Of a stretch of 64,000 nucleotides of DNA, positions 33,214 to 57,354 are shown in pieces. Position numbers and translations under genes: made by a program. Location: the IMG/VR virus record IMGVR_UViG_3300042907_001080, positions 124,001 through 188,000 of that record. One strand, 5' to 3'. Under the pieces are notes generated by a model that searched no databases, was not told the origin of the DNA, and was given only the letters and a program-made list of their open reading frames with translations. Positions within the stretch are counted from its first letter, which is position 1. Each line of letters opens with the position of its first letter.

Positions 33214-33653
33214 AGATTATCTTTCTTCACTGTTTTAATATCAATTACGCCTGTGTTTACAGGACCGCCGAAATCGCCATCGACTACTACATTGGCACAC
33301 AGTTCACGGAACCAACGATCTATAATTTCTTCGTCTTTGTCTCCGTCCTCACCATATCCCTCTTGCTTTAATTTTAACACAAAAAGGTCGTTCCAGTCAA
33401 GCTCAAAAAAGCCATTACGAACATTATCTTTGTTGACATGTGTTTCGATTACGCCTACCCACGGTTCTTTTTTACGTGTTGCACGTTCTTTTGGAGATAA
33501 TTTGGCCTGTGCCTCTGCTTCTGTAGCACGTTCGGCAGCTTCAGTGGCTGCTTTGGCTGTTTCAGAGGCTTGTGCTGCAATGCCTATTGATCGTTCTGCT
33601 TCTGCTCTGATCTTGTCAATACCAAATAATTTTTCAATCCATTTATTCATCAT
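33210..33653 (-). CDS. Hypothetical phage protein
   Basis: 147 aa, ATGA overlaps at both ends. Confidence 0.65.
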   Translation of the reverse strand: MMNKWIEKLFGIDKIRAEAERSIGIAAQASETAKAATEAAERATEAEAQAKLSPKERATRKKEPWVGVIETHVNKDNVRNGFFELDWNDLFVLKLKQEGYGEDGDKDEEIIDRWFRELCANVVVDGDFGGPVNTGVIDIKTVKKDNL

Positions 33654-34504
33654 GTTCCCCATTCATTTTTAAACAATGGCACCTGCAATCTGTCTGAATA
33701 TCTCAGTCCATGTTTCATTGCCAGTTCTGCTACTCTGCGGTTATTTAGTGTGTATACACTTTCAACCCCGCCCACAGGCATGAGATAAACATTACCAGTG
33801 AAACCTTCTGCACGATAGATATCCACAGCTTCTAGAGCTTCTTCTGCATCACCTTCAGTGGCCACTACTAATTTGAGATATACATGACCAGCTTCTTGAT
33901 ATTCACAGACTATGTCTGGGCGTATAGCTTCACTAGGCTGTTCTCCTGAACAACTGAGTTTGGCACTGACCGAGAATGTAACTTCTCTACTGGCAAAAGG
34001 AGGATTCTGTGCCCATTCTTGTAGATATTTTTTAAACTCCGGAGTTAGCTTTTGAGTACCGTTGGTTTCAAAAGTAATTTCTTTAAGACCTGTCATACTC
34101 AGATGATTCAACAGATCCGGATAAGCACGTTGCCAACCTAACAACGGTTCACCGCCAGTGATAACCAAGTGTTCATCTTCCCAACGCTTGTAAGGTAATA
34201 TTTCCATGATGCGTTCTGCAATCGCATCAGTTGTTAGCATGGGCGAAAGATCTTTGAATCTAGGATCCCAGCTGGCATAGCTATCACAACCTGTGCTTAC
34301 TAATGGTAAGTCTTGATATTTAAAAAACTTCTTAATATCGGCCGCAATAAAATCACGCTCCTTGCTTTGTTCACCACGTGACATACCAAAGCCGTCACAA
34401 GTAAAGTTACATCCAAACGTGCGTAAGAACACACTAGGGACACCCATATATCGGCCTTCGCCTTGTATGCTGTAAAAAAGTTCTGCTATTTTTATTTTGC
34501 TCAT
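33650..34504 (-). CDS. queE: 7-carboxy-7-deazaguanine synthase (radical SAM)
   Basis: 'ELFYSIQGEG...G.PSVFLRTFGCN', 'GCDS', 'VITGGEPLL', 'FETNGT', 'SAKL', 'YLMP', 'RLQV.L'; lies near folE, queD-like and dpdA. Confidence 0.9.
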   Translation of the reverse strand: MSKIKIAELFYSIQGEGRYMGVPSVFLRTFGCNFTCDGFGMSRGEQSKERDFIAADIKKFFKYQDLPLVSTGCDSYASWDPRFKDLSPMLTTDAIAERIMEILPYKRWEDEHLVITGGEPLLGWQRAYPDLLNHLSMTGLKEITFETNGTQKLTPEFKKYLQEWAQNPPFASREVTFSVSAKLSCSGEQPSEAIRPDIVCEYQEAGHVYLKLVVATEGDAEEALEAVDIYRAEGFTGNVYLMPVGGVESVYTLNNRRVAELAMKHGLRYSDRLQVPLFKNEWGT

Positions 34505-34509
34505 AGTTT

Positions 34510-34538
34510 ATTATACACTCTTTTTTTGTAATTGCCAA
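34510..34538 (-). promoter_or_regulatory. Sigma70-type promoter for queE (probably leaderless)
   Basis: TTGGCA-17 nt-TATAAT; ATG is 5 nt after the -10 box. Confidence 0.65.
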
Positions 34539-34675
34539 GAGCCATTGCCCTGATCTAGCCATTCTAATGTGTCGCCTTCGCCCCAACCTTGCAGATCCAA
34601 TACTTCCTGTGGTATTGGCATAATGAGATCACCAGTATCGGGATCTTCTTCAAGAGTAACTGTCCATCGAGTCAT
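34511..34675 (-). CDS. Small AbrB/MazE-like (swapped-hairpin) protein, 54 aa, absent from the ORF track
   Basis: MTRWTVTLEEDPDTGDLIMPIPQEVLDLQGWGEGDTLEWLDQGNGSWQLQKKSV; 'L..P.P.E.L...GW.EGD.LEW' pattern; ATGA overlap. Confidence 0.7.
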   Translation of the reverse strand: MTRWTVTLEEDPDTGDLIMPIPQEVLDLQGWGEGDTLEWLDQGNGSWQLQKKSV

Positions 34676-34854
34676 GTTATCATTCCTGGTTGTGATCTAC
34701 GCTTACGACATTCTTGTTTTACTTCATTAGGAACATCAGGATGCCATTCGGATATACTGCAATCGTATACCTTATATTCTGGCACGTCTACTTGAGAAAG
34801 AAAGAGAATCCAAAGCACACAGGCAACAACAAACCCAATGATGTATTTCTTCAT
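34672..34854 (-). CDS. Small membrane-anchored protein
   Basis: N-terminal hydrophobic helix followed by 'YDCSISEWHPDVP..VKQECRK'. Confidence 0.6.
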   Translation of the reverse strand: MKKYIIGFVVACVLWILFLSQVDVPEYKVYDCSISEWHPDVPNEVKQECRKRRSQPGMIT

Positions 34855-35057
34855 ATTCTGTCGCTTAACAATATTTTGCACAGCATGGCATCATGTTCGT
34901 GATAAAATTTAAATGTCATTTGATCTGTTTCTGGATGACTAGTGTATCGATCGCCTGGCAAGCCAAAGTGTTCCAACACCATGGCACAGGTTTCATTCCA
35001 CCAAAATCCAGTTTGTTCTTTTTTCCAAGGAACTAAAATTGTTTTTAGATCAGACAC
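34851..35057 (-). CDS. Hypothetical protein
   Basis: 68 aa, GTG start. Confidence 0.55.
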   Translation of the reverse strand: MSDLKTILVPWKKEQTGFWWNETCAMVLEHFGLPGDRYTSHPETDQMTFKFYHEHDAMLCKILLSDRI

Positions 35058-35067
35058 AATATCTCAC

Positions 35068-35445
35068 TCATTTTTTATAATTACCTTTTTCTGGAATAAC
35101 ATGTCTGACACCGCCTGTGGGGTCTTCCATGTCACCTTTGCGTCGAGGAATCAAATGAACATGTGGATACGGCACAGTCTGTCCAGCAGCTTCGCCCCAA
35201 TTAAGGCCAATATTGAATCCATCCCACTCACCATTTTTAACCTTTGCCTGCCCTACTCTCAGAGCATCAGCAAAACAATCTTCAATAACTCCCACAGCTG
35301 AATATTTAGGCACAAACAACAAGTGACCGTCTGTTACAGGATACTTGTCTTTAAAAACAACCACATGAAAGTCGTCTTGTACAACATCGTTCCATGGTGC
35401 CTGCCCTGCATCACGTGCATCGTCTAACGAATAATGTAAGTTCAT
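35068..35445 (-). CDS. HIT family nucleotide hydrolase
   Basis: 'DKYPVTDGHLLFVPK', 'GFNIGLNWGEAAGQTVPYPHVHLIPRRKGD'. Confidence 0.9.
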   Translation of the reverse strand: MNLHYSLDDARDAGQAPWNDVVQDDFHVVVFKDKYPVTDGHLLFVPKYSAVGVIEDCFADALRVGQAKVKNGEWDGFNIGLNWGEAAGQTVPYPHVHLIPRRKGDMEDPTGGVRHVIPEKGNYKK

Positions 35446-35669
35446 CGTTTATATTCCTTTCTTTCTGTAGGTAGGTCATCTTCTCGTACAACAAACTCAC
35501 GGCCGCCTAGACTGCCTGCAAATGCTTTAGTGCGTTCCATATAAACTAATCGTAGTTTAAGAGTTTGAAATGCAACATCTAAAAATGCCTTGGGCTTATA
35601 ACCTAGAACATGCATATCAAAATCTTTACCTGCGTCAGTGCAATGAACTTTAATCTTAGAATCGATCAT
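35442..35669 (-). CDS. Hypothetical protein
   Basis: 75 aa, ATGA overlaps. Confidence 0.55.
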   Translation of the reverse strand: MIDSKIKVHCTDAGKDFDMHVLGYKPKAFLDVAFQTLKLRLVYMERTKAFAGSLGGREFVVREDDLPTERKEYKR

Positions 35670-36205
35670 TTTGTCCACCAATCTTCCCAAGGAAAATCAA
35701 TCCATACATCCTTCTCTGCCTTGTTAACTTCCATGCCAACGAAATCCATCTTAACATTGCACTTGCTGGCGAGATTATCTACTAACACAGCAAATTTAAC
35801 ATTGTTATTCCACACTTCTTCCCAGGCTGGATCATCTGGAAAGCAACCACTTGGCCAATCTTTCATGATCCAGTTAAGTGTGGTGCCTTGATCGTTGATA
35901 TCATCTACAATTAAAATGTTTTTAAAAGCAGTATCGCTATCAACTGCACGATCCTTGGACAACGGTCCTAGAGCATCTTCAGCCATCCATAAATTACTCT
36001 CCGGACCAATCTCACTATCTCGTAGACTTACATTGAGAGTATGTAACGGAATATTAAAATATTGACTGATCATAACAGCAGGAATCAATCCCCCTCGAGT
36101 AATTCCTACAATATAATCGGGCCTCCACGTTCCTATAGCAAGCTCTCTACAAATCTTGCCGACTAGTCCGGTTACTTCATGCTGGTTGATTTTGAGTTTG
36201 TTCAT
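35666..36205 (-). CDS. Type I phosphoribosyltransferase (Gpt/Hpt-like purine PRTase)
   Basis: 'VGITRGGLIPA', PRPP loop 'ILIVDDINDQGTT', C-terminal 'WIDFPWE'. Confidence 0.85.
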   Translation of the reverse strand: MNKLKINQHEVTGLVGKICRELAIGTWRPDYIVGITRGGLIPAVMISQYFNIPLHTLNVSLRDSEIGPESNLWMAEDALGPLSKDRAVDSDTAFKNILIVDDINDQGTTLNWIMKDWPSGCFPDDPAWEEVWNNNVKFAVLVDNLASKCNVKMDFVGMEVNKAEKDVWIDFPWEDWWTK

Positions 36206-36644
36206 TTCTATCCTTGAGATATTGTTCGTGTTGTATCCATTTGTTGTTGACTAAAAATCCCCATTCACGTTTATGCGGGCCAGGCATGAATAGGGTCCAA
36301 GCAGTTATTCCAGGTTGAAGTTCGATGCGATGATAGCTATTAGAACCACAAATACGGAAGTGACCAGGACCCCGCCAATGCTTGGTCTCTCCAATCATTT
36401 GGCCATTTTCGAAATTAGGAGTATATTCATAGTATCCACCTTTTAGTATCAGTGTAGCATAGGGCCACGGATGATCATGAACATCGTCAGGATCACCTTT
36501 GAGGAATTTATGTAAAAATACGTTGAATGGAAAACGATCTCTTTCTTTCAAGAAGAGATAATACCGTTCGAGATACGGTTCGTTATTAACACGATCATAA
36601 ATGATACGCTTGCGGCCCAGTCGTTCAAGCAGTTTCAAAAACAT
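36177..36644 (-). CDS. Cupin-fold protein
   Basis: 'HDHPW....IL.GGY.E' and 'YHRIEL' metal-binding cupin motifs. Confidence 0.75.
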   Translation of the reverse strand: MFLKLLERLGRKRIIYDRVNNEPYLERYYLFLKERDRFPFNVFLHKFLKGDPDDVHDHPWPYATLILKGGYYEYTPNFENGQMIGETKHWRGPGHFRICGSNSYHRIELQPGITAWTLFMPGPHKREWGFLVNNKWIQHEQYLKDRNEQTQNQPA

Positions 36645-37044
36645 TATTAACTTCTTCCTTGAGATATCTTATCAGTTCTTTATCTGTGGGCGATACACTA
36701 TAATTGTTCTTGTAAAAAATCTCATAGCTGTCGCTGCCGTATTTTCCAATGCCATATAACATTGTAGCATCATTTCCGTCCCAAGTCAAATAGTCTTGAC
36801 TCATTCTAATCAATCGAGTATAACGAACATTAACCATTCCGAGTGGTTGGATTATGCTTTTGACAAACTCTTCGTCTGCTTGTAGCAATGCCAGTGCTGT
36901 AGGAAACCAATATAGAAATTCTGGCAGAGTGGTCTTCACAGCTTTGCGACCAGTTTGATTTAACATAATTACCCCAACAAAATGCTGCCAAGCATTGTCA
37001 ACTTGTTGTTGCACCATTAGATCGTCACGTAGAGGTTTAATCAT
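36625..37044 (-). CDS. MBD4-like HhH-GPD DNA glycosylase
   Basis: 'W...V..IMLNQT', 'FPT', 'IQPLGM', HhH 'LYGIGKYGSDSYEIF' and catalytic-Asp region 'PTDKEL..YL', paralleling the MBD4 glycosylase domain. Confidence 0.8.
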   Translation of the reverse strand: MIKPLRDDLMVQQQVDNAWQHFVGVIMLNQTGRKAVKTTLPEFLYWFPTALALLQADEEFVKSIIQPLGMVNVRYTRLIRMSQDYLTWDGNDATMLYGIGKYGSDSYEIFYKNNYSVSPTDKELIRYLKEEVNNVFETA

Positions 37045-37259
37045 TCTACATCCTCGTCAAACCATTCATCAACTTGACGTTCTGCTTCTTCTCGGGTCAT
37101 TGCATGAACAAAGATTCTAGCAGGTTCTCCGACAGTGTGCTGAATATTAAACTTTATCACACCAGCGGGGATAAGATTCCAATCTCGTTCTACAACAAAC
37201 TCTTGTAGATGCTTCATTCTGTGTATTAAATTATCTGTAAGATCTTTGGCTGTGTTCAT
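37041..37259 (-). CDS. Hypothetical protein
   Basis: 72 aa from the ATGA-overlapping start. Confidence 0.55.
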   Translation of the reverse strand: MNTAKDLTDNLIHRMKHLQEFVVERDWNLIPAGVIKFNIQHTVGEPARIFVHAMTREEAERQVDEWFDEDVE

Positions 37260-37450
37260 TGCTGTCCCCGAACTATATTCTTGTTCTCTGTTTCGGCATC
37301 TTGACGCAGTTGATCTTCCATCCACAACATTTTTTGATGTTGATACATTTCTTCTGAAAGTCCATGCCATCCACAGCATTTACCAGTCGGGCTTCGGCCG
37401 CATCCGCATTTACCAAATTCTTCTGCATTTTCTTTAACTCTTATTTGCAT
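37256..37450 (-). CDS. CDGSH-type iron-sulfur/zinc-finger-like small protein
   Basis: '[15 protein letters not shown]' follows the C-x-C-x2-S...C-x-G-x-H pattern. Confidence 0.6.
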
Positions 37451-37458
37451 AATATTCC

Positions 37459-37944
37459 TTAAGTTGGGAAGGGCCACGCTTTACTTGGCTCTGGTCGAGT
37501 TTTTAATTTTACATTCTCTTCAATAACGTCACCTGTTATTTCATCACACAGGTCAACTTGATACGGTGCAATGATATGCACTGCACAATCTTCTTCTGAC
37601 CAATCATGTTCGCCGTCATAGAGCCAACCTGCACCACCTTCGTAGTAGAGTTCTTTGAGTTCTTGTTGCTCTAATTCGCTAATGTCATCACTGAATTCCC
37701 ACTCAACACTGACACTGTCGTCAAACTCACAACCCCAACCACAATCGGTTCGAGCATAGGCAACAGGATCACCTTCCCAGGGAAGATTGCAATCTAAATC
37801 ACCTTCAACAAAGCCTTGTCCCCAACGATAGGTTTCGTCAATGTTAAACCAACTGATGCTATCATCTGGATTCTTACGATACATTTCTACATGGTAGACA
37901 ATGCTTTTCTTTTCCAGTGGTTTGATTACATATACTTGACTCAT
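37459..37944 (-). CDS. Hypothetical acidic protein
   Basis: 161 aa, Trp/Glu/Asp-rich. Confidence 0.6.
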   Translation of the reverse strand: MSQVYVIKPLEKKSIVYHVEMYRKNPDDSISWFNIDETYRWGQGFVEGDLDCNLPWEGDPVAYARTDCGWGCEFDDSVSVEWEFSDDISELEQQELKELYYEGGAGWLYDGEHDWSEEDCAVHIIAPYQVDLCDEITGDVIEENVKLKTRPEPSKAWPFPT

Positions 37945-38118
37945 TTAAATTCCCTTGTAAGCATCAAGAATAAGAGCACCGCCAATTGTAAATCCTACAA
38001 TAGCAAGTCCGTAGTTACCGTTAACTAACGCACTCAATCCAGATAGTAAGTTTAGTCCGCCGATTGTAAGGCTAATTTCTTTTCTGTTACGGCCAACCCA
38101 TATAAAAAATTTATCCAT
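37945..38118 (-). CDS. Small membrane protein (57 aa), absent from the ORF track
   Basis: MDKFFIWVGRNRKEISLTIGGLNLLSGLSALVNGNYGLAIVGFTIGGALILDAYKGI; SD AAGGA; abuts both neighbours. Confidence 0.6.
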   Translation of the reverse strand: MDKFFIWVGRNRKEISLTIGGLNLLSGLSALVNGNYGLAIVGFTIGGALILDAYKGI

Positions 38119-38231
38119 TATATTTCCTTAATAAAGTATTTTGATGCAGGGTATTGCACCTGCAACCACTCTAACAAGCCCGCTTCAACTGGTAAGCGAA
38201 CGCTATCAAACTTGTTAGTAATGTATCTCAT
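38118..38231 (-). CDS. Microprotein (37 aa), absent from the ORF track
   Basis: MRYITNKFDSVRLPVEAGLLEWLQVQYPASKYFIKEI; ATGA overlap with the folE stop and TAATG overlap downstream. Confidence 0.55.
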   Translation of the reverse strand: MRYITNKFDSVRLPVEAGLLEWLQVQYPASKYFIKEI

Positions 38232-38974
38232 CGTGGCGAAAATTCTTGCTGCATTTTAATATTGTCAAAGAATTCTTTCTTTGTTCCTGGATCATCTTTA
38301 AATGCACCTTTGAGTACAGTGGTCTGTGTTAGACTCGAATGCGCCATAATGCCACGATTCTCACAGCAACCGTGAGTGGCTTGTATGTATACTCCGATGT
38401 TTTCACTATCTGTAGCTCGACTTATTTCTCTTGCAATATCATTGCAGAGTTCTTCCTGGAGAGTGCCACGCCTAGCGCACCACTGAGCAATACGAGTATA
38501 CTTGCTAAGGCCAATAAGTTTGTTGGCAGCAATGATACCAATATAAGCCACCCCAGATACAGGCTGGTGATGATGACTACACATACTACGCAATTCACTT
38601 CTAACAACCAACATTCCTTCATATCTATCCTCACTATCATTCGGAAACGCTGTTGCATCTGGAGCAGGGTCGTATCTACCTGACATGATTTCATTAAAAT
38701 ACATTTTAGCAAGTCTACGTGCTGTGCCTTTACTGTTGGGATCATTTTCACGATCAATAAGCAAACTGTCTAGCACTTGTTCAAATGCAGGAGTTGCTTC
38801 GTCAATTAATTTTTCTAAGTCGCCGTCATGCAGATAATCACTGATGTTGTCACCGGCCCAGAAACGCTTGCCTTCACGTTTCATCTTAAAACGAATGTGA
38901 TCACCTAGATATGCTTCTTTATATCCGCCATCGCCTGCCATTGCGTCCAGGCCTGTTTCTGTTTTATTTGTCAA
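38228..38974 (-). CDS. folE: GTP cyclohydrolase I
   Basis: 'TARRLAKMY', 'SMCSHH', 'IGLSKY.RI', 'LQEEL', 'ATHGC...RG'; TTG start with SD GGAG. Confidence 0.93.
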   Translation of the reverse strand: MTNKTETGLDAMAGDGGYKEAYLGDHIRFKMKREGKRFWAGDNISDYLHDGDLEKLIDEATPAFEQVLDSLLIDRENDPNSKGTARRLAKMYFNEIMSGRYDPAPDATAFPNDSEDRYEGMLVVRSELRSMCSHHHQPVSGVAYIGIIAANKLIGLSKYTRIAQWCARRGTLQEELCNDIAREISRATDSENIGVYIQATHGCCENRGIMAHSSLTQTTVLKGAFKDDPGTKKEFFDNIKMQQEFSPR

Positions 38975-39013
38975 TTTATTCTCCGAGTTAATGACGTGGA
39001 TGTCATATAATAG

Positions 39014-40078
39014 TTATTTTAACATCTCTAATAGTTTATTACAACTAAAAAAGTTTTCTTGTAGTATAGCTACCTGTTTATTTAGGCTAGGCAGTCGAGT
39101 TTCGTAATTATCCATATGCTGGATTATTTCTCTACAAATATCTGGACGATATACAGTATATGCATCGTAGCTCTCAGTCCATTTGCTAGGATACTTAAAT
39201 GTATCTAAAGCCATTTCACTATAGCTGAGTCTATCAGGAACCATAGGAATGGCACCTACAATAGCACCTTCATACCAACTGATGCCTAGGGTTTCTTGCA
39301 GGTTTGCACTAAACACCAATTTGGCTTCGCCTAGCAAATTATGATATTCGTTTTTTGTTAGTTGTTGATCTTGACAGACGACAAATTCATATTGCGGTAA
39401 GTGTTCTTTCAAGTCACGAAAGATTTCAACCTGTTTCTCTGGAGCGATACGATGCGGGAACAAGATAAGATCACGTTTAGTCATGTTTTTATACATTGTT
39501 AACGTGTCCTCCATATACTCCATAGGCCAACCTGTGCGCACAATCTTAGTATCATATAGTTTTTTTGCTGGAGTAAATCCTAACAAATTTTCACAAAACA
39601 TGTCAATATGAAACTGTGTAGCAAAGTAGTTGTGATCAAACGCATGATAGAAACTTTGTTCAGCATTTCTAACCCAGGGTTTATTTCCTACAAGGCGTCC
39701 TAAGAAGTCTTGCGGATCATATGAGCCAGCATGCCAAAGACCATGTGTAGTTACTGGAATTCCCAGTAGCTCACTCATATACTTTAAATTTATGATACCA
39801 GGATGCCAAGCATCAGTAAAGATAAAGTGATCGCCGGGATGAATGGATCCGTTACAAAATAACCTACCCATTTGTTCAATTTGACTAGCCTTGTAGATAT
39901 TCGTGCCGCCAAAGTTGAGAAATGCTCCAGGAGTGGTAGCACTAGGAATGTCCGTAGGACCTGATATAATGTTGACATGGTGCCCTGCTTTTTTAAGGAT
40001 TGCCGGCACGTGAGTTTTCCACTGACCCGTATATCTAGTCTCTACTGCTTCAAGATCAATGAGAAAAACTCGTGCCAT
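39014..40078 (-). CDS. GT-B (GT4-like) glycosyltransferase within the deazaguanine locus
   Basis: C-terminal 'FPHRIAPEKQ', E-x7-E motif 'QETLGISWYEG', 'VPDRLSYSE'. Confidence 0.8.
   Translation of the reverse strand: MARVFLIDLEAVETRYTGQWKTHVPAILKKAGHHVNIISGPTDIPSATTPGAFLNFGGTNIYKASQIEQMGRLFCNGSIHPGDHFIFTDAWHPGIINLKYMSELLGIPVTTHGLWHAGSYDPQDFLGRLVGNKPWVRNAEQSFYHAFDHNYFATQFHIDMFCENLLGFTPAKKLYDTKIVRTGWPMEYMEDTLTMYKNMTKRDLILFPHRIAPEKQVEIFRDLKEHLPQYEFVVCQDQQLTKNEYHNLLGEAKLVFSANLQETLGISWYEGAIVGAIPMVPDRLSYSEMALDTFKYPSKWTESYDAYTVYRPDICREIIQHMDNYETRLPSLNKQVAILQENFFSCNKLLEMLK
39016..39044 (-). promoter_or_regulatory. Possible sigma70-type promoter for folE
   Basis: TTGTAA-17 nt-TAAAAT. Confidence 0.4.
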
Positions 40079-40081
40079 TAA

Positions 40082-40306
40082 TTAACCTCTTTTTTGAAAG
40101 TGTGGTCTGTTGCCTTGATATGGACGTCTTGGCCGTTTGCTGGCAAGATAGGATCCATAGTTTTGACTATCCCTGCGATAGAGATCTGCAGGATTAAAAT
40201 CGCAGAGTTGAAATCTGCACCAATCGTGGTAGGCCTCGAGGTCCTCCCACACCTTTACAACGTCAGGACGATTTTCAAAGTACCTGTAGTCCTTGTAGTT
40301 TTTCAT
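40082..40306 (-). CDS. Hypothetical protein
   Basis: 74 aa, SD AAGGA. Confidence 0.6.
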   Translation of the reverse strand: MKNYKDYRYFENRPDVVKVWEDLEAYHDWCRFQLCDFNPADLYRRDSQNYGSYLASKRPRRPYQGNRPHFQKRG

Positions 40307-40317
40307 CGATGTTCCTT

Positions 40318-40707
40318 TTAGTATTTGATGAATGAACCATTTTCTCCGTCTTCGGAGACCTCAATCCAAATCTCGCGACCTGGATACTTTTTGCTAATGA
40401 CGTCATATAAGTCGCCTGACATCATTTCACAACTCTTATAATCTAAACTTAGTGTAGCATCTTTGTAGAGATTTAGCAACCATCGTTTAAACTGAATAAA
40501 CTCAATATCACGATCATCGTGTGTAACGCCAATCCAAACTTTGAAGTGAAAGATGTGACGATGCGGATAACCTAGAAAACTTACATCATATTCATCACCT
40601 GTAGCAAGTGCTGGGTCTGTAAGTGCAGCTGGATATTTGTGCATACCTTCTTTCTGAAAGGTAACCCAAATCATTTTGTTAGGTCTAACGTCTTGTCGAA
40701 TGTTCAT
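40318..40707 (-). CDS. queD: QueD/PTPS-like T-fold protein (probable 6-carboxytetrahydropterin synthase)
   Basis: 'EGMH', 'HRH.FHF', 'RDIEF..FK', 'SCEM', 'VSEDGENG' are consistent with the PTPS/QueD fold; context next to folE. Confidence 0.65.
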   Translation of the reverse strand: MNIRQDVRPNKMIWVTFQKEGMHKYPAALTDPALATGDEYDVSFLGYPHRHIFHFKVWIGVTHDDRDIEFIQFKRWLLNLYKDATLSLDYKSCEMMSGDLYDVISKKYPGREIWIEVSEDGENGSFIKY

Positions 40708-41078
40708 CTTAGTTGTTCCATGGTTATAATTTTAGATAATTCTTCACCGAGATCTTTATCTTCAGTGACCACATGTAGACTGTGTCGATTCTCATCGTTC
40801 TTTCGGTCATACTTGGTAGTTTCAATGATAGTACCGCCACTAGCGCCATAGACATTTAGTCGAAAACCTTGTGATGCAATGTTTGGGCCTTCGCTGTCAA
40901 CTGAAATAAGCTGATTACTGTAATCTTCTTCGTCGTTCATTAGCCAGTTGCGAATTTTTTGTTTAAATGTTAATTTCATAGGTTTCTTTTCTACTACACT
41001 TCTTGCACGATTAATTTTATTAGCACCGCGGATTCTTGGAACCTTTGTCACCGATGCTACTGCGTAGCCACCACTCAT
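40704..41078 (-). CDS. Hypothetical protein
   Basis: 124 aa, ATGA-coupled. Confidence 0.6.
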   Translation of the reverse strand: MSGGYAVASVTKVPRIRGANKINRARSVVEKKPMKLTFKQKIRNWLMNDEEDYSNQLISVDSEGPNIASQGFRLNVYGASGGTIIETTKYDRKNDENRHSLHVVTEDKDLGEELSKIITMEQLR

Positions 41079-41608
41079 TTGATAATCTCATCTTTACCAT
41101 ATTGATCCCAACTAGTAAACTTATTTCTATCTAGTAGGTCATGGAGGTTATGGCACCACACTCCGTGATTAGTTGCTTTAAAGTCTTTGTCATCAATTTT
41201 CAGCGTAGCGTTATAGCCTAGTTGATTAATATAAGGTAATTTTACACTAATCTGCGGAATAAATCTACGCTTTTCGGTAAGACCACTTTCAAGCAATCCT
41301 TCCGTTTCACGAACATCAAAGTCTAAGGTACACCAAAATTCGTCCTCTGCATCTAAGCAGACATAGATCATATCTTCCCAAGGACGCCATGTTTCTGTAT
41401 CGTTAACACCATTAGTCTTAAAACTTTGATTAGCACCAAAGTAAATATGTTTGCACCTGTTGTTACGAGCCAATTCCATAATAATATATGGATCATGCAC
41501 ACCTACAACAAACAGTGTTTTCATTCCGTAGGCAGGAGTATGTTCAATCTCTACGCCGGTGAAGAAGGTAATGCTATCAGCAACACCTGAATCGTAATTT
41601 CTTTTCAT
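41075..41608 (-). CDS. Hypothetical enzyme-like protein in the dpd locus
   Basis: 177 aa alpha/beta pattern ('FFTGVEIEHTPAYGMKTLFVVG', 'HIYFGANQSF'). Confidence 0.65.
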   Translation of the reverse strand: MKRNYDSGVADSITFFTGVEIEHTPAYGMKTLFVVGVHDPYIIMELARNNRCKHIYFGANQSFKTNGVNDTETWRPWEDMIYVCLDAEDEFWCTLDFDVRETEGLLESGLTEKRRFIPQISVKLPYINQLGYNATLKIDDKDFKATNHGVWCHNLHDLLDRNKFTSWDQYGKDEIIK

Positions 41609-41751
41609 TTTTTAAATAAATTTTGAATTGATCGGATTAGATTAAGAAATCGAAAATGATAGTCGGTTAAGAATGGAGTTCGATGCGGACAACGACCTTG
41701 TTGCCAATCACAGTTAACTGTGATTTCTTGCCTGCATGTGTCGCATTTCAT
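41605..41751 (-). CDS. Cys-rich microprotein (48 aa), absent from the ORF track
   Basis: MKCDTCRQEITVNCDWQQGRCPHRTPFLTDYHFRFLNLIRSIQNLFKK; ATGA overlaps at both ends. Confidence 0.6.
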   Translation of the reverse strand: MKCDTCRQEITVNCDWQQGRCPHRTPFLTDYHFRFLNLIRSIQNLFKK

Positions 41752-41975
41752 AGTTCTAGTCCATTTCTTCTTGCTTCTTGTTCTGCCTGCGCTTCTTGCA
41801 TCACTGCTTCGTGCTTGTGTTTAAGTATAACAATATCATCCTTTAAACGCAACCTTTGTTTCTTCAATTCTTCTATTTTTAGGTCATCAAAGATACCAGT
41901 TTTTTCCATACTGTCTATCTGTTTGTCCAAAGCACGGTGAGCTTCTTCTAGATGCTTGATTCTATTTTGATACAT
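41748..41975 (-). CDS. DUF465/YdcH-like coiled-coil protein
   Basis: 'L...H..LD..I........DD..I..LKK.RL.LKD.I' pattern. Confidence 0.7.
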   Translation of the reverse strand: MYQNRIKHLEEAHRALDKQIDSMEKTGIFDDLKIEELKKQRLRLKDDIVILKHKHEAVMQEAQAEQEARRNGLEL

Positions 41976-41984
41976 ATCAACTCC

Positions 41985-43595
41985 TTATTCTACAACCAAA
42001 CTGTTTAATTCGTCATCGTCTGGATTGGCAAAATCAATTTCGCCTGCTTTCTTGCCATCATCGAAATCAAATAAGTTACCAAATGTGTTAGCAGCAGGAC
42101 CGCCTTGTAAACGTGAACCTTCTAGTGATTTCAAGAACTGCGCACCAGTTTCAATCATATCAAACGCTTCTGCTTTGGTTTTGGTATTGAATAGTTCTTC
42201 AACAAATGTACCGAAGTAAAGAATTTTATTTGGAACCCAATCGCTGAATTCAATTTCTTTCTTGCCTTCAATGCTCTTCATACGCCAGTCTGGAGTAAAC
42301 CTAGCACATTCAATATCCATTAACTGTTGAGCACGTTGCACCGCTTTGATATGACATTCGACATTATGCCCCATCATTAGTGCGTAACTGAAACTATCCC
42401 AACTAGTCTTGTTTGGAATCTTACCTAGCTTGTTAAGTCTCGGAACTTCGTGATAGTGTTCTGGATTCAAGTGATTAAACTTAACATCTCCGAGTTCGGC
42501 ATCTGTCTTACGAACACCGTAATTGTAATATGCAATATCGCCCATGGTCAAACGGCTTCCGAATTCACTTTCAAAAGGAAACGGAATATCAAATCGTCCT
42601 GAAAGTGCTTTATTATCAGGAGCCTTGTCCATGATCACTGACCAACGCTTGTTGGTATGTTGTGCATTTGTGTAAACAAGTCCGTGAGCAGTAGCAATGA
42701 ACGGGCTTGCACAGTCAAAACTGATTGTGAGTTCTGGATTGATGTGTTTACGGATCTGACGTTGAATTTGAGTTAGATAGCATGACCAATCTAATTGTGC
42801 TGTGCCCAAGAAGTGAATCCAGTTCTTGCCGTCTAGCATTCCTTCGTCACGCATGGTCATTAGACGTTTGAGTGTGATATCCATCTTACACATATTAGCA
42901 CCACCAAATGCCCAACCTTCTGCTTCTTTTCCTGCAAATGGTCCTTTGGGATCGCTGAACTCTACAACGCCACGATACCACTTTTCTGCAGTATCCCAAT
43001 CACCGCCTTGCAATACATTAAGCCACTTGGTAGCTCCCAACCGATTATCTAGAAAATACTTGTTATTATAACGAGTCTTTTCTAAACAGTCTTCGAATGT
43101 TTTCAATCCAGTCTTCGGACTGTGGATGTGATCACAGGCCCATGTAGGCACGTCTAACATCATTGACCAATCAGCAGTTGCTTCTAGCCATTCAAGAATC
43201 TTTTGACGTGTCTTGGTAGCTTCTGCACCTTCAAAGTTCAACCAATCAAACTTGAGAACACCTTTACCGATCTGATAACCACCGGAGTCGCCTAAAATCA
43301 TTGTTTGTCCGCGATCACGCTGTTGTATCATGGATTCTTGATCCTGTGCTTTGATAACATCAAGTTGAGCGTGTCCTGCTGAATACAGAGCATACTTATA
43401 GGTAAAGTATCCTTGATCTGGATTAAGAAAGTTCATTCCTTCAATTCCTTGATCAAAGCCTGCAGGAATACGATCCTTTGGTACAAACTCTTCTAGTCGC
43501 TGTTTTGCAACATAGGTAGAATAAAAAGAACTAATTGCCGGCAGATATACTGCATAGTCCTTTTGTAATGGTGTTAGATTAACTGGTGGTTTCAT
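41985..43595 (-). CDS. dpdA: DpdA-like DNA 7-deazaguanine transglycosylase (TGT superfamily)
   Basis: TGT motifs 'DSGGYQI', 'MMLDVP', 'LNVLQG', 'GWAFGG', 'IHFLG', 'SFDCASP'; adjacent to replication genes and near folE, queD-like and queE. Confidence 0.85.
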   Translation of the reverse strand: MKPPVNLTPLQKDYAVYLPAISSFYSTYVAKQRLEEFVPKDRIPAGFDQGIEGMNFLNPDQGYFTYKYALYSAGHAQLDVIKAQDQESMIQQRDRGQTMILGDSGGYQIGKGVLKFDWLNFEGAEATKTRQKILEWLEATADWSMMLDVPTWACDHIHSPKTGLKTFEDCLEKTRYNNKYFLDNRLGATKWLNVLQGGDWDTAEKWYRGVVEFSDPKGPFAGKEAEGWAFGGANMCKMDITLKRLMTMRDEGMLDGKNWIHFLGTAQLDWSCYLTQIQRQIRKHINPELTISFDCASPFIATAHGLVYTNAQHTNKRWSVIMDKAPDNKALSGRFDIPFPFESEFGSRLTMGDIAYYNYGVRKTDAELGDVKFNHLNPEHYHEVPRLNKLGKIPNKTSWDSFSYALMMGHNVECHIKAVQRAQQLMDIECARFTPDWRMKSIEGKKEIEFSDWVPNKILYFGTFVEELFNTKTKAEAFDMIETGAQFLKSLEGSRLQGGPAANTFGNLFDFDDGKKAGEIDFANPDDDELNSLVVE

Positions 43596-44333
43596 TTAAG
43601 CAGCCTGTGCTGGGATAATATATTTGTAAGTTGCTAGTCCGCTATCTAGAGTGATCTGAATAGCACCTTCATTGCTCAACGACATCTTAGCAGTGTTGGT
43701 ATCTGAAATCTTAAGTATGCTCAAGATCGGAGCAACTGGCCAAGTCCAACCGCGATCTAATTTGCCTGCAACATTCTGTGCAAACACAAACTCACCACCG
43801 TGTGTTGATGCATCACCGAATGTAAATTTAAGATTACCGCCTTCAGTTTTAGCAAGGAATGTGGGATGCTCTGAGTTAGCACCTGCTTGAAAGTTAAAAC
43901 GAATCACAGAAGTCACTGATGGTTCGATTTCAACATCCCACTTAACACCACGAAACTTCACAGTCTTCATCTTTTCATTGATGATTTCTTGATTCATGAA
44001 GCGATAGTCGTTCTTGAAGTCGCCGTCTTTGTTTTCAAAGTGTAGACCTACTGGCAAAGTTTCGCCATTGCGTTCTGCTGTGGTGATACTGATCTTTGCA
44101 CCTTCTTTGTATTCTGCACCTTCCAACAGATATTTCAACTTGTTCAGTTGCGGCATGCCAAACACACCAATCATATCTGGATACGGATTAGCAGTTTCTG
44201 CTTCCATGATCACTGAACGGTCATCTGCCATTGAGTTAATAGTTGTGCCTTTGTCTGTGCCTGTGACTTTAACTGTGGTCAAGAAGCCGAGGTTCTGTGT
44301 GTGGCTAACGATGTCTTGTAAAATATCTTTCAT
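43596..44333 (-). CDS. Putative DNA sliding clamp (gp45/PCNA-like)
   Basis: 245 aa two-domain beta-alpha pattern ending 'GAIQITLDSGLATYKYIIPA'; directly downstream of the polymerase; clamp loader is in the window. Confidence 0.7.
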   Translation of the reverse strand: MKDILQDIVSHTQNLGFLTTVKVTGTDKGTTINSMADDRSVIMEAETANPYPDMIGVFGMPQLNKLKYLLEGAEYKEGAKISITTAERNGETLPVGLHFENKDGDFKNDYRFMNQEIINEKMKTVKFRGVKWDVEIEPSVTSVIRFNFQAGANSEHPTFLAKTEGGNLKFTFGDASTHGGEFVFAQNVAGKLDRGWTWPVAPILSILKISDTNTAKMSLSNEGAIQITLDSGLATYKYIIPAQAA

Positions 44334-44356
44334 TAAGAATTCTCCTGTATATTAAG

Positions 44357-44385
44357 ATTATATTTAGATCTTGAGAAAAAATCAA
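44357..44385 (-). promoter_or_regulatory. Sigma70-type promoter with overlapping late TAAATA, upstream of clamp-dpdA
   Basis: TTGATT-17 nt-TATAAT; TAAATA at 44361-44366. Confidence 0.6.
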
Positions 44386-44393
44386 CCTAGAAA

Positions 44394-50122: not shown

Positions 50123-50499
50123 TTCTTCTTGCCCTTGCCATAATTAGCAGCACCTGCTTTGCGACACTGTACCAATCGTCCTGACGCATAGGCACTGGGC
50201 CAAACCTTGGACGAAGCTTTGATCTTGTGATAGCAGGCATCTTTCTTGCCTTCTTCAAGTTGGTCTTCTGAGACCATGTCTCCGTGACATATAGGGCATA
50301 CACCTGCTTCTATGTAGTCTTGAAGACTTTTACCTTCCGCTACATCTTGCTCCATAGGAATCAAATCTTTCTTATGTTTAGTGTCGCCCTGTTTCTCTGC
50401 CCGCTTTTTATCTTTGTGAGCGCCAGCACCTGCGCTTTTAGAATTTTTAGCAACAAAGTTTCTAGGCCGGCTGGCTGGTATAATGTCTTTGGCTCTCAT
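50119..50499 (-). CDS. Putative internal head protein
   Basis: Modules 'RNFVAK...AGAHKDKK', 'CPIC' and 'DACYHKIK..KVWPSAYASGRLVQCRK', separated by VAE/LEE. Confidence 0.6.
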   Translation of the reverse strand: MRAKDIIPASRPRNFVAKNSKSAGAGAHKDKKRAEKQGDTKHKKDLIPMEQDVAEGKSLQDYIEAGVCPICHGDMVSEDQLEEGKKDACYHKIKASSKVWPSAYASGRLVQCRKAGAANYGKGKKK

Positions 50500-53052: not shown

Positions 53053-53076
53053 AGTATTCCTCTCGAGGTCATACTA

Positions 53077-53084
53077 TATTTATC
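53077..53084 (-). promoter_or_regulatory. Late promoter-like GATAAATA heading the internal-protein cluster
   Basis: Intergenic; context GACGATAAATA also occurs at 61427-61437. Confidence 0.65.
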
Positions 53085-53096
53085 GTCTCAAACAGT

Positions 53097-53462: not shown

Positions 53463-53465
53463 CAA

Positions 53466-57308: not shown

Positions 57309-57314
57309 GTTTAT

Positions 57315-57343: not shown

Positions 57344-57354
57344 GCAGTCCTTTT
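57325..57354. terminator. Intrinsic terminator after the lysis operon
   Basis: aaaaggactg-tgtcaag-cagtcctttt with a T7 tract on the - strand. Confidence 0.85.

What the first reader, a model, noticed from the sequence alone, without database searches (positions are those of the whole stretch)
33650..43595. 7-deazaguanine pathway with a QTMAN/GTDC1-like glycosyltransferase: candidate glycosylated deazaguanine DNA base
Seen: a GT-B gene (39014-40078) lies directly upstream of folE, between it and queD-like, in the locus with queE and dpdA. Its motifs FPHRIAPEKQ, QETLGISWYEG and VPDRLSYSE recall, from memory, the DUF3524/GTDC1 family (HRW..DK, HEFFG.S.LE, P.RL.YPE). Established: human GTDC1 (QTMAN) mannosylates queuosine, a 7-deazaguanine, in tRNA; FolE+QueD+QueE make CDG; DpdA inserts deazaguanines into DNA. 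Inference: the phage may carry a sugar-hypermodified deazaguanine not among the known dPreQ0/dG+/dPreQ1/dADG/dCDG/dDG set.
Basis: partly seen in the sequence, partly recalled or inferred. Interest (0 to 1): 0.85.

Follow-up and report, generated by a model that had tools for sequence, protein, structure and literature searches.

The report
Sugar transferase tied to deazaguanine DNA
A phage gene for a sugar-adding enzyme sits, in many unrelated phages and some bacteria, inside the gene set that replaces guanine in DNA with 7-deazaguanine, which predicts a sugar-bearing modified G that nobody has yet described chemically.

Summary
ORF 39014-40078 (-) is a real glycosyltransferase: the AF2 model has pLDDT 95.7, a GT-B fold, GT4-type retaining motifs (EX7E) and conserved catalytic residues. 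It lies between folE and a 'queD-like' gene, in one minus-strand block with queE and a very divergent TGT-fold DpdA.

Two corrections are needed. The 'queD-like' gene is DpdL, the proposed CDG decarboxylase (motif LxxxHRHxF), and the window holds no canonical QueD. The claimed kinship to GTDC1/QTMAN is not specific: there is no PF12038 match, and QTMAN-like clusters are only some among many GT4 structural neighbours.

This GT subfamily is almost always next to DpdL and/or DpdA. That holds in five cultured phage lineages (Phosso, PA5oct, ACP17, BUDD/X1, BCSR5) and in 75 of 80 diverse IMG/VR loci. It also holds in 59 of 66 rows of the GT tree and in alphaproteobacterial islands ordered YhhQ-like transporter-GT-DpdA. 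DpdL and DpdA also occur without the GT (phiST, which carries dDG; Vibrio phage 2.275.O), so the GT looks like an add-on tailoring enzyme.

The most likely role is glycosylation of a 7-deazaguanine base destined for, or already in, DNA. Acceptor atom, sugar and order of steps are unknown. I found no paper describing this. PA5oct and ACP17 make it directly testable.

The parts
39014..40078 (-). GT4-type (retaining, GT-B fold) glycosyltransferase, 354 aa; founding member here of a virus-dominated subfamily linked to DpdL/DpdA
   Evidence: AF2 pLDDT 95.7, pTM 0.92. Foldseek PDB top hits are the GT4 enzymes BshA, MshA, glycogen synthase and PglA, E down to 7e-11. BFVD top hit is the ACP17 homologue, TM 0.89. 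E262-x7-E270, R210 and K215 are conserved across 58 relatives. 39 of 58 relatives hit PF00534.
40318..40707 (-).
   Evidence: Carries motif LGYPHRHIF = LxxxHRHxF (definition in PMC10516641). Hits phrog_17812 at 3e-30. Is 55% identical to the ACP17 homologue and 31% to the phiST homologue.
41985..43595 (-). Divergent DpdA-like guanine transglycosylase (TGT superfamily), 536 aa
   Evidence: Invariant D103-S-G-G-x-Q108, D148, Q196-G197, H261-x-L-G264 and D294 in 51 homologues. AF2 pLDDT 84.9. The nine best Foldseek PDB hits are all tRNA-guanine transglycosylases, E 1.5e-7 to 2e-4. hhalign against ACP17/BUDD/BCSR5 DpdA gives 96% probability, E 5e-9. 43% identical to the PA5oct protein next to its GT.
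38228..38974 (-). GTP cyclohydrolase I (FolE)
   Evidence: Pfam PF01227 1e-38; NCBIfam FolE 2e-39.
33650..34504 (-). QueE-like radical SAM (CDG synthase)
   Evidence: Pfam Radical_SAM 32 bits, above cutoff. Five NCBIfam QueE models at about 1e-12, below their cutoffs. 32% identical to annotated QueE of BUDD and PA5oct.
41075..41608 (-). p177, unknown protein found only in GT-bearing phages
   Evidence: tblastn against 50,697 phage records hits only PA5oct-like phages (48%) and ACP17 (30%, between FolE and DpdA). No family or Atlas match. Syntenic in nearly all IMG/VR relatives whose locus reaches its position.
40082..40306 (-). p74, small basic ORF always between DpdL and GT in the window's phage group
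   Evidence: Present in 79 of 80 close IMG/VR loci; pI 9.4; no family hit.
40704..41078 (-). p124, unknown, variably present
   Evidence: Synteny table; no family hit.
35666..36205 (-). Purine phosphoribosyltransferase-like protein (possible deazapurine base salvage to nucleotide)
   Evidence: Pfam Pribosyltran 2e-13. Weak XPRT/HGPRT NCBIfam hits. A homologue lies next to QueE in PA5oct. A PRTase also lies beside a GT relative in L095.
35068..35445 (-). HIT-family nucleotide hydrolase/transferase
   Evidence: Pfam HIT 1.4e-10; syntenic in most close relatives.
36625..37044 (-). Small HhH-GPD (EndoIII/MutY-like) protein; membership in the module uncertain
   Evidence: Pfam HhH-GPD 4.7e-8; present in only part of the relatives.

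Best explanation
The ORF is a catalytically intact GT-B glycosyltransferase of the GT4 (retaining, EX7E) type. It acts as an add-on tailoring enzyme of a 7-deazaguanine DNA-modification module.

Proposed flow:
- FolE and QueE, with a QueD from the host or from outside the window, make 7-carboxy-7-deazaguanine (CDG).
- DpdL, the proposed CDG decarboxylase, gives 7-deazaguanine.
- The divergent TGT-fold DpdA exchanges this base for G in DNA.
- The GT transfers a sugar from a nucleotide sugar onto the deazaguanine. This happens either on the DNA after insertion, as T4 glucosyltransferases do on hmC, or on the free base before DpdA inserts it.

Virion DNA would then carry a sugar-bearing deazaguanine that blocks restriction.

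Shown here: fold, catalytic motifs, identity of the neighbouring genes, and very strong, lineage-independent gene linkage. The dependence is one-way: the GT needs the deaza genes, not the reverse.

Inferred: that the acceptor is the deazaguanine base, that the product ends up in DNA, the donor sugar, the atom of attachment (CDG carboxylate, N2 as in huimycin, or a ring carbon) and the order of steps.
For: Fold and motifs.

Linkage in cultured phages: the GT abuts DpdA and/or DpdL with QueE and FolE nearby in ACP17, PA5oct (FolE not in the locus read), BUDD and BCSR5. In Phosso it abuts DpdL and FolE, with QueE close and the DpdA homologue about 170 kb away. The GT gene overlaps or abuts DpdA in PA5oct and ACP17.

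Phage collection: GT in 22 records, DpdL in 28, both in 17, out of 50,697.

Metagenomes:
- 80 of 80 close IMG/VR loci are syntenic.
- 75 of 80 loci from a more diverse sample have DpdL within 9 kb, and 78 of 80 have at least one deaza gene.
- 5 of 8 distant representatives (31-35% identity) are linked, 2 lie on short contigs, and 1 is unlinked.
- 59 of 66 rows in the GT tree carry DpdL and/or DpdA.

Bacterial islands: a Vut_1/YhhQ-like transporter (family of queuosine-precursor transporters), then the GT, then DpdA.

One-way dependence: phiST has DpdL and a DpdA, makes dDG and has no GT. Vibrio phage 2.275.O has the window-type DpdA with QueF, QueC and FolE and no GT.

PA5oct DNA resists G-containing restriction sites and is hit by nucleases that sense modified G; its chemistry is unsolved (PMC12191111). 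ACP17 dpdL plus dpdA alone gave no dDG in E. coli (PMC10516641).

Precedent: the glycosyltransferase HuiG is proposed to put GlcNAc on N2 of a preQ0 derivative (PMC7439116).
Against: There is no chemical evidence anywhere for a sugar on a DNA deazaguanine.

7-deazaguanine and CDG offer no ordinary hydroxyl acceptor. The queuosine diol used by QTMAN cannot be made here: no QueC motif in the window, and no QueF, QueA or QueG was seen.

The nearest solved structures (BshA, MshA, LmbT, SenB) use small-molecule acceptors, and the T4 DNA glucosyltransferases are not among the top 50.

The family is acidic (median pI 5.7), which gives no sign of DNA binding.

The failure of the phiST dpdL+dpdA pair in E. 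coli, although phiST has no GT, means the ACP17 failure is not informative.

Some relatives lack any deaza context: L090, and PhiXhv-15 with GlmS and a deacetylase.
Confidence: 0.5

Rival explanations
1. The GT does not touch the base. It glycosylates a protein or another target, or serves mainly as a partner of DpdA needed for base exchange (loosely as DpdB assists bacterial DpdA). The DNA then carries only dDG or dCDG.
For: Tight adjacency and overlap with DpdA would equally suit a physical partner. The base lacks an obvious acceptor. The family is acidic.
Against: The catalytic set for nucleotide-sugar transfer is conserved across 58 divergent members (E270 invariant; R210, K215, E262 and H116 at 90% or more), so transferase chemistry is under selection. 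DpdA homologues work in clusters without the GT. In phages the closest pairing is with DpdL, in 75 of 80 loci.
Confidence: 0.2
2. The GT makes a soluble glycoside, not a DNA base. This could be a pterin glycoside from FolE plus a T-fold enzyme plus a GT (as in cyanobacterial biopterin glucoside, from my own knowledge), or a free deazapurine glycoside like huimycin.
For: FolE, a T-fold protein and the GT are adjacent in the window and in many loci. The nearest solved GT4 structures act on small molecules. HuiG is proposed to glycosylate a free preQ0 derivative. A PRTase and a HIT protein lie in the block.
Against: DpdL lacks the catalytic Cys of PTPS/QueD. Bacterial islands keep GT plus DpdA plus a transporter without FolE or DpdL. 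The gene sits among replication genes (PolB, clamp) as DNA-modification modules do. A soluble glycoside has no obvious benefit for a lytic phage.
Confidence: 0.12
3. The module modifies tRNA, not DNA. The TGT-like enzyme inserts a deazaguanine at tRNA position 34 and the GT glycosylates it, a true QTMAN analogue.
For: The DpdA fold matches are all tRNA-guanine transglycosylases. QTMAN_N clusters are among the structural neighbours.
Against: No PF12038 match. No route to queuosine in the window. The only tRNA call in the window is an antisense ARAGORN hit without Rfam support. PA5oct, which has the same DpdA-GT pair, has G-modified DNA. The ACP17-type homologues are treated as DpdA in PMC10516641.
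Confidence: 0.05
4. An ordinary GT4 for cell-envelope or host-surface sugars, or a glucosyltransferase for a hydroxymethyl-pyrimidine, that merely happens to lie here.
For: Some JGI records name relatives 'glycosyltransferase involved in cell wall biosynthesis'. A 27% relative in PhiXhv-15 sits with GlmS and a deacetylase.
Against: Linkage to DpdL/DpdA holds across many unrelated lineages and across bacteria. No thymidylate-synthase-like hydroxymethylase was found among the non-structural ORFs scanned. T4 GTs are not among the top structural hits.
Confidence: 0.04

Closest known systems
Phage 7-deazaguanine DNA modification with DpdL and DpdA3 (Cellulophaga phage phiST, dDG; Cui et al. 2023, PMC10516641)
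   Same: FolE, QueE, DpdL (LxxxHRHxF), no QueC, a distant TGT-fold DpdA, placed beside the DNA polymerase.
   Different: phiST has no GT and its DpdA is 259 aa, only weakly alignable to the window's 536-aa protein (46% hhalign probability). The window lacks QueD. It adds the GT, p177, a PRTase and a HIT protein.
T4 alpha- and beta-glucosyltransferases (glucosyl-hmC)
   Same: A GT-B enzyme encoded by a phage as an add-on to a base-replacement pathway. This is the model for post-replicative sugar transfer to a modified base.
   Different: No detectable sequence or top-50 structural relation. The acceptor there is a hydroxymethyl on a pyrimidine; here there is no hydroxymethylase and the base would be a deazapurine.
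QTMAN/GTDC1 (tRNA-queuosine alpha-mannosyltransferase; Pfam PF12038 + PF00534)
   Same: A GT4-type GT-B enzyme that decorates a 7-deazaguanine derivative after a TGT enzyme has inserted it. QTMAN_N clusters appear among structural neighbours, TM 0.70-0.74.
   Different: No PF12038 match. Plain GT4 clusters are equally near or nearer. The QTMAN acceptor is the cyclopentenediol of queuosine in tRNA, which this pathway cannot make.
HuiG of the huimycin cluster (and the dapiramicins)
   Same: A glycosyltransferase in a FolE/QueD/QueE-type cluster that is proposed to put a sugar directly on a 7-deazaguanine base, at N2 (PMC7439116; bioRxiv 10.64898/2026.04.15.718813).
   Different: Its product is a soluble secondary metabolite of actinomycetes, with a beta-N-glycoside and no DpdA.
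BshA / MshA (GT4, bacillithiol and mycothiol synthesis)
   Same: Best solved structural matches: retaining GT4 with EX7E and R..K motifs.
   Different: 11-13% identity, TM about 0.6-0.67, unrelated pathway and context.
Bacterial Dpd restriction-modification islands (DpdA-K; dPreQ0/dADG)
   Same: Chromosomal islands in which a DpdA marks self DNA with a deazaguanine. The alphaproteobacterial GT-DpdA islands have an integrase or resolvase, a HEPN protein and a CoiA-like nuclease nearby.
   Different: No PADLOC Dpd model matches any tested component. No DpdB/C-K were recognised. The island adds a GT, sometimes DpdL, a Vut_1 transporter and a two-component system.

Membership tests
GT-B fold, GT4-type retaining glycosyltransferases (Pfam Glycos_transf_1 clan) | Two Rossmann-like domains with an inter-domain cleft (GT-B fold) | tested here: met
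   AF2 model pLDDT 95.7. 183 PDB matches at E<=0.001, and those listed are GT-B enzymes, mostly GT4 or GT5.
GT-B fold, GT4-type retaining glycosyltransferases (Pfam Glycos_transf_1 clan) | C-terminal EX7E motif and the R-x4-K phosphate-binding motif | tested here: met
   E262-TLGISWY-E270 and R210-IAPE-K215. E270 is invariant; R210, K215 and E262 are conserved in 90% or more of 58 relatives. A profile hit to the GT4 enzyme 8xsg spans this region, E 2.5e-4.
GT-B fold, GT4-type retaining glycosyltransferases (Pfam Glycos_transf_1 clan) | Pfam PF00534 match above the gathering score | tested here: not met
   The window protein has no PF00534 hit at E<=1. 39 of 58 relatives hit it weakly, best 1.3e-8. 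This is a divergent subfamily.
GT-B fold, GT4-type retaining glycosyltransferases (Pfam Glycos_transf_1 clan) | Nucleotide-sugar-dependent transferase activity | not testable with these tools
   Needs an enzyme assay.
QTMAN / GTDC1 (DUF3524) | N-terminal QTMAN_N (PF12038) domain | tested here: not met
   No PF12038 hit for the window GT at E<=1. PF12038 is not among the 25 families most often hit by 58 relatives. No NCBIfam hit.
QTMAN / GTDC1 (DUF3524) | Closest structural relatives are QTMAN proteins | tested here: inconclusive
   Atlas structure search, run with a close relative's model: QTMAN_N sets at TM 0.70-0.74, generic GT4 sets at 0.72-0.77. N-domain features: Gtf3_N and Glyco_transf_4 come first, QTMAN_N is rank 12 with score 0.89. 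No QTMAN structure was among the top 50 PDB hits.
QTMAN / GTDC1 (DUF3524) | Acceptor is queuosine (cyclopentenediol) in tRNA | tested here: not met
   No QueC-type motif in the window. No supported tRNA gene. Activity itself is not testable here.
Phage DNA glucosyltransferases (T4 alpha-GT / beta-GT type) | Sequence or structural kinship to T4 AGT/BGT | tested here: not met
   Not among the top 50 PDB or BFVD matches.
Phage DNA glucosyltransferases (T4 alpha-GT / beta-GT type) | Co-occurring hydroxymethyl-pyrimidine pathway | tested here: not met
   No thymidylate-synthase-like or hydroxymethylase domain in the 30 window ORFs scanned by Pfam. The ORFs at 1-28 kb were not scanned.
7-deazaguanine DNA modification module (DpdA-based) | TGT-superfamily transglycosylase with the catalytic Asp residues | tested here: met
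   Invariant D103, D148 and D294 with DSGGxQ, QG and HxLG motifs. The nine top Foldseek hits are TGTs. hhalign 96% to ACP17-type DpdA.
7-deazaguanine DNA modification module (DpdA-based) | CDG supply: FolE, QueD, QueE | tested here: inconclusive
   FolE and QueE are present. No canonical QueD (CxxxHGH) in the 64-kb window. It may be host-encoded or lie outside the window.
7-deazaguanine DNA modification module (DpdA-based) | DpdL signature LxxxHRHxF | tested here: met
   LGYPHRHIF at residues 53-61 of the stop-to-stop reading frame, 45-53 of the 129-aa ORF. Homology to ACP17 and phiST DpdL.
7-deazaguanine DNA modification module (DpdA-based) | Modified G actually present in virion DNA | not testable with these tools
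   Only indirect evidence, and only for the relative PA5oct: restriction resistance and END nuclease targeting (PMC12191111).

The most novel reading that the evidence does not exclude
These phages, and a set of alphaproteobacterial islands, carry the first sugar-bearing purine in natural DNA: a glycosylated 7-deazaguanine made by a dedicated GT4 subfamily working with DpdL and DpdA. The linkage may be unusual (an ester on CDG, an N2-glycoside, or a C-glycoside formed on the electron-rich pyrrole ring after decarboxylation). Sister clades may elaborate it further with an extra radical SAM enzyme or a second GT. In bacteria the same pair, together with a nuclease, would be a new self-marking restriction-modification type.
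Probability: 0.4. Interest if true: 0.9.

Novelty: new variant of a known kind. Interest (0 to 1): 0.75.

Why it matters
Eight 7-deazaguanine derivatives are known in phage and viral DNA (PMC10516641), and none carries a sugar. Sugar hypermodification is so far a pyrimidine story: glucosyl- and arabinosyl-hmC, base J, and T derivatives.

A glycosylated deazapurine would add a new chemical class of DNA base. It would explain the unsolved G modification of the therapeutic-candidate jumbo phage PA5oct. It could explain why dpdL plus dpdA alone failed in E. coli. It would also give a new handle on restriction evasion, on sensing by Type IV and END nucleases, and on enzymatic DNA labelling.

The family is large (1152 clusters at 50% identity) and very abundant in metagenomes, so the modification would be ecologically common. 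Cultured phages with the gene exist, so the prediction can be tested within weeks.

Tried and rejected
**Searches that found nothing**
- Direct family searches of the GT (Pfam, PHROGs, NCBIfam, PADLOC) and a sequence search of the PDB gave nothing useful. Only profiles and the fold worked.
- A megablast of 9 kb against 50,697 phage records found no match, so the phage itself is not in that collection.
- p177 remains unknown: the Atlas search gave scores of 0.73 or less.
- The island proteins F6 and F12 had no Pfam, PADLOC or PDB sequence matches.
- Promoter and terminator scans did not exceed shuffled controls.
- Rfam found no preQ1 riboswitch or tRNA in 33-44.5 kb. The ARAGORN tRNA-Glu lies antisense inside an ORF and is probably false.
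- Six literature searches found no paper linking a glycosyltransferase to DpdA-type DNA modification. One further search ('DpdL') was swamped by unrelated acronyms. The 2024 MMBR review and the supplements of Cui 2023 are not held.
- The first search for related loci attempt with the 58-sequence alignment failed for lack of a conserved stretch.

**Ideas considered and dropped**
- GTDC1/QTMAN membership is rejected as specific kinship.
- The cupin 'cysteine dioxygenase-like' p155 (36177-36644) was considered as a hydroxylase that would create an acceptor. It occurs in 107 unrelated phage records, such as mycobacteriophages, and in none of the listed GT-bearing isolates, so it was dropped.
- Protein charge (pI) did not discriminate a DNA acceptor from a small-molecule acceptor.

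Full report
**What is there**

Bases 33650-47063 of the window are one minus-strand block. In order of transcription it reads:
- PolB (44394-47063)
- a 245-aa ORF at the sliding-clamp position (43596-44333; its homologue is annotated as a sliding clamp in Phosso)
- a 536-aa protein (41985-43595)
- a 75-aa ORF
- p177 (41075-41608)
- p124 (40704-41078)
- a 129-aa T-fold protein (40318-40707)
- p74 (40082-40306)
- the 354-aa glycosyltransferase candidate (39014-40078)
- FolE (38228-38974)
- several small ORFs
- an HhH-GPD protein (36625-37044)
- a cupin-like protein (36177-36644)
- a phosphoribosyltransferase (35666-36205)
- a HIT protein (35068-35445)
- QueE (33650-34504)

The coordinates and gene order of the finding are correct.

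**The glycosyltransferase**

Single-sequence searches of Pfam, PHROGs, NCBIfam, PADLOC and the PDB gave nothing for this protein. It nevertheless has a very large family. The word-index search saturated at 8000 hits. The exhaustive search of 50%-identity representatives gave 1152 clusters at E<=1e-3 and 266 at E<=1e-30.

An alignment of 58 members (28-92% identity to the window protein) shows these conserved positions:
- Invariant: Q66, G118, E140, P185, E270, P281.
- At 90% or more: R210 and K215 (the R-x4-K nucleotide-sugar phosphate motif), E262 (with E270 this forms EX7E), H116, and many aromatic and acidic residues of the N-terminal domain.

With this alignment AlphaFold2 gives pLDDT 95.7 and pTM 0.92, with two Rossmann-like domains. 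Foldseek against the PDB returns GT4 or GT5 retaining enzymes: BshA, MshA, glycogen synthase, PglA, GlgM, LmbT and SenB. E-values go down to 7e-11, TM is about 0.6-0.67 and identity 9-16%. Against viral models the best hit is the ACP17 homologue at TM 0.89. A profile of the family hits the GT4 glucosyltransferase 8xsg over the R..K-EX7E region at E 2.5e-4. Scanned one by one, 39 of 58 members hit Pfam Glycos_transf_1. The protein is therefore a real, apparently active GT-B/GT4-type glycosyltransferase that forms its own divergent, virus-dominated subfamily.

**Is it GTDC1/QTMAN-like?**

Not specifically. PF12038 (DUF3524, now QTMAN_N) is not hit by the window protein at E<=1 and is not among the 25 families most often hit by the 58 relatives.

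The ESM Atlas structure search was run with a close relative's model. It lists two sets of QTMAN_N-bearing bacterial clusters among the nearest models (TM 0.70-0.74), but plain GT4 clusters score 0.72-0.77. A feature search with the N-terminal domain alone puts Gtf3_N and Glyco_transf_4 first and QTMAN_N at rank 12, with score 0.89 and few shared features. I file this as 'membership not supported, analogy possible'.

**The neighbours**

FolE is unambiguous.

QueE is a radical SAM protein whose best NCBIfam hits are five QueE models, all below their cutoffs. It is about 32% identical to annotated QueE of BUDD and PA5oct.

The 'queD-like' gene is not QueD. It has LGYPHRHIF, exactly the LxxxHRHxF signature by which Cui et al. 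defined DpdL. DpdL is the proposed, still unproven, CDG decarboxylase, in which QueD's catalytic Cys is replaced by Leu. The protein hits phrog_17812 and is 55% identical to the ACP17 homologue and 31% to the phiST homologue. No ORF in the 64 kb carries CxxxHGH or a QueC-type SGGxDS motif.

The 536-aa protein has no library hit. Four lines of evidence place it in the TGT superfamily:
- In 51 homologues the residues D103-S-G-G-x-Q108, D148, Q196-G197, H261-x-L-G264 and D294 are invariant. These correspond, from my knowledge of TGT, to the DSGGFQ, LD, QG, LGVG and FDC active-site motifs.
- Its AF2 model has pLDDT 84.9.
- The nine best PDB matches of that model are all tRNA-guanine transglycosylases, E 1.5e-7 to 2.3e-4, after which E jumps above 1e-3.
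- hhalign relates the family to the ACP17/BUDD/BCSR5 DpdA group at 96% probability, E 5e-9.

It aligns only weakly to the 259-aa DpdA3 of phiST (46% probability), so I call it DpdA-like without a subfamily name.

*Cultured phages.* In the 50,697-record phage collection the GT is found in 22 records and DpdL in 28, and 17 records have both. Those 17 fall into five lineages:
- Sinorhizobium phage Phosso
- the PA5oct group
- Acidovorax phage ACP17
- Xanthomonas phages BUDD and X1
- Burkholderia phage BCSR5

In ACP17 and BUDD the GT abuts DpdA and/or DpdL, with QueE and FolE within a few kb. The same holds in BCSR5, except that its DpdL lies about 3 kb from the GT. PA5oct is the same except that FolE is not in the locus read. 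In Phosso the GT abuts DpdL and FolE, with QueE close and the DpdA homologue about 170 kb away. In PA5oct and ACP17 the DpdA stop overlaps the GT start.

*Metagenomes and genomes.*
- 80 IMG/VR loci close to the window (GT 77-100% identical) all keep the order PolB-clamp-DpdA-p177-DpdL-p74-GT.
- Of a second set of 80 IMG/VR loci fished with distant members, 75 have DpdL within 9 kb and 78 have at least one of DpdL, DpdA, FolE or QueE. The two without any are cut by contig ends.
- Of eight distant representatives (31-35% identity), five are linked, two lie on short contigs (2.7 and 7 kb), and one 113-kb contig shows nothing within 7 kb.
- In a tree of 66 GT sequences, 59 have DpdL and/or DpdA nearby, spread over all major branches.
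- In one-genome-per-species bacterial and archaeal assemblies, 45 loci were found. Those binned to odd taxa with phage synteny are probably phage contigs.
- About 30 of those loci are chromosomal islands of Alphaproteobacteria (Magnetospirillum, Methylobacterium, Pelagibacterium, Devosia, Ochrobactrum, Sulfitobacter, Shimia and others). In these the GT is always beside the window-type DpdA, often preceded by a Vut_1/YhhQ-like transporter (E 1e-5, just under cutoff), sometimes with DpdL, and without FolE or QueE.

*Direction of dependence.* The dependence runs one way.
- phiST has QueD-QueE-FolE-MazG-DpdL-ATPase-DpdA3 and no GT, and its DNA carries dDG in place of all G.
- Six other DpdL phages also lack the GT.
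- Vibrio phage 2.275.O has the window-type DpdA with QueF, Vut_1, QueC, an amidotransferase and FolE, and no GT.

The GT thus behaves as an optional tailoring gene of deazaguanine modules. It is neither a core part of them nor an unrelated passenger.

**Mechanism**

Steps I regard as shown:
- a GT4-type enzyme with an intact catalytic set;
- a CDG-oriented pathway (FolE, QueE, no QueC);
- DpdL;
- a TGT-fold transglycosylase;
- conserved co-location, often with overlapping reading frames.

Steps that are inferred:
- that the GT's acceptor is the deazaguanine;
- that the product is in DNA;
- which sugar is transferred;
- which atom receives it;
- whether transfer precedes or follows insertion.

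I commit to glycosylation of the deazaguanine base that DpdA puts into DNA, with a slight preference for action on DNA after insertion, by analogy with T4.

The main difficulty is chemical. 7-deazaguanine and CDG have no alcohol. Candidate sites are the CDG carboxylate, N2 (the site proposed for HuiG in huimycin and seen in the dapiramicins) or a ring carbon.

Three observations fit the idea, though none proves it:
- The tight GT-DpdL pairing in phages suggests the GT uses the DpdL product.
- ACP17 dpdL plus dpdA gave no dDG in E. coli, and the authors noted that other enzymes may be needed. The phiST pair also failed, so this is weak.

Evidence against includes the small-molecule acceptors of the nearest solved structures, the acidic charge of the family and the few relatives in other contexts. 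The rivals, with my weights, are:
- a GT that acts on something other than the base, or mainly as a DpdA partner (0.2);
- a soluble pterin or deazapurine glycoside (0.12);
- a tRNA system (0.05);
- an unrelated envelope or pyrimidine GT (0.04).

**Known or new**

The searchable library has no paper that connects a glycosyltransferase with DpdA-type DNA modification. The only papers touching these phages leave the chemistry open. I could not read the 2024 MMBR review or the Cui 2023 supplements, so prior mention in a table cannot be excluded.

I rate this a new variant of a known kind: a 7-deazaguanine DNA-modification module with a dedicated glycosyltransferase. It is directly testable in cultured phages.

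Noticed in passing
window 40318-40707 (-): The 'queD-like' gene is DpdL (LGYPHRHIF). No canonical QueD (CxxxHGH) and no QueC-type motif exist anywhere in the 64-kb window, so CPH4 synthesis must come from the host or from outside the window.
   Followed up: yes
window 35068-35445 and 35666-36205 (-): A HIT protein and a purine phosphoribosyltransferase-like protein sit in the same block. A PRTase homologue also lies next to QueE in PA5oct. Another lies beside a GT relative together with a Nudix and an ATP-grasp protein (L095). This recalls the tubercidin route, in which a PRTase acts on CDG, and hints at a nucleotide-level branch.
   Followed up: partly
window 41075-41608 (-): p177 has no recognisable family. 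In 50,697 phage records it occurs only in GT-bearing phages (PA5oct group, ACP17), so it may be another component of the pathway.
   Followed up: partly
L108-L139 (bacterial genome contigs), e.g. L129:6330-11085, L121:5078-13477: Alphaproteobacterial chromosomal islands carry a MASE1 histidine kinase plus LuxR regulator, a Vut_1/YhhQ-like transporter, the GT, sometimes DpdL, the window-type DpdA, an unknown 585-aa protein and a second GT4. An integrase or resolvase, a HEPN protein and a CoiA-like nuclease lie nearby. This may be a self-marking defence system. No PADLOC model matches.
   Followed up: partly
L147:4866-10026 (and L149-L168): A separate phage clade has QueD-QueE-FolE-DpdL, then a 456-aa extra radical SAM enzyme (CX3CX2C), then the GT, all co-directional and overlapping. 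In L152 the radical SAM gene carries an intein. This suggests further chemistry on the base before the sugar is added.
   Followed up: partly
L004-L083 versus window 41985-43595: Among close relatives the GT stays 77-100% identical while the DpdA ranges from 33 to 100% identity (for example L050: GT 79%, DpdA 33%). The transglycosylase gene seems to have been exchanged between otherwise similar phages.
   Followed up: no
L086 (Xanthomonas phage PhiXhv-15) 4669-7903: A 27%-identical GT relative lies with GlmS and a BshB/LmbE-like deacetylase and no deazaguanine genes. This is a different, possibly amino-sugar, pathway in jumbo Xanthomonas and Erwinia phages.
   Followed up: no
L144 (Vibrio phage 2.275.O) 6908-13934: The window-type DpdA also occurs with QueF, a Vut_1 transporter, QueC, an amidotransferase and FolE but no GT. 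This DpdA family therefore also serves preQ1/G+-type pathways.
   Followed up: yes
window 36625-37044 (-): A 139-aa HhH-GPD (EndoIII/MutY-like) protein lies inside the block. It is too short for a full glycosylase. It is of interest because host END nucleases use an inactive EndoIII domain to sense modified bases.
   Followed up: no
window 36512-36587 (+): ARAGORN calls a tRNA-Glu(ttc) antisense inside the cupin-like ORF. Rfam finds no tRNA there, so it is probably a false positive.
   Followed up: yes
window 50496-62293: The phage also encodes a cytidylyltransferase-like protein (381 aa), a ClpB-like double AAA+ chaperone (785 aa), DnaJ, a DUF4337 protein, a holin-like protein and PhoH. Relatives reach 353 kb, so this is a jumbo phage. 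It is absent from the 2025 phage collection at the DNA level.
   Followed up: no
L099-L107, L117, L120, L138-L143: Contigs binned as Crocinitomicaceae, Neomarinimicrobiota, Pacearchaeota, Methanobacteriota, Fischerella and other MAGs carry the phage synteny (DpdA-DpdL-GT-FolE-QueE). They are probably phage contigs mis-binned into MAGs.
   Followed up: no
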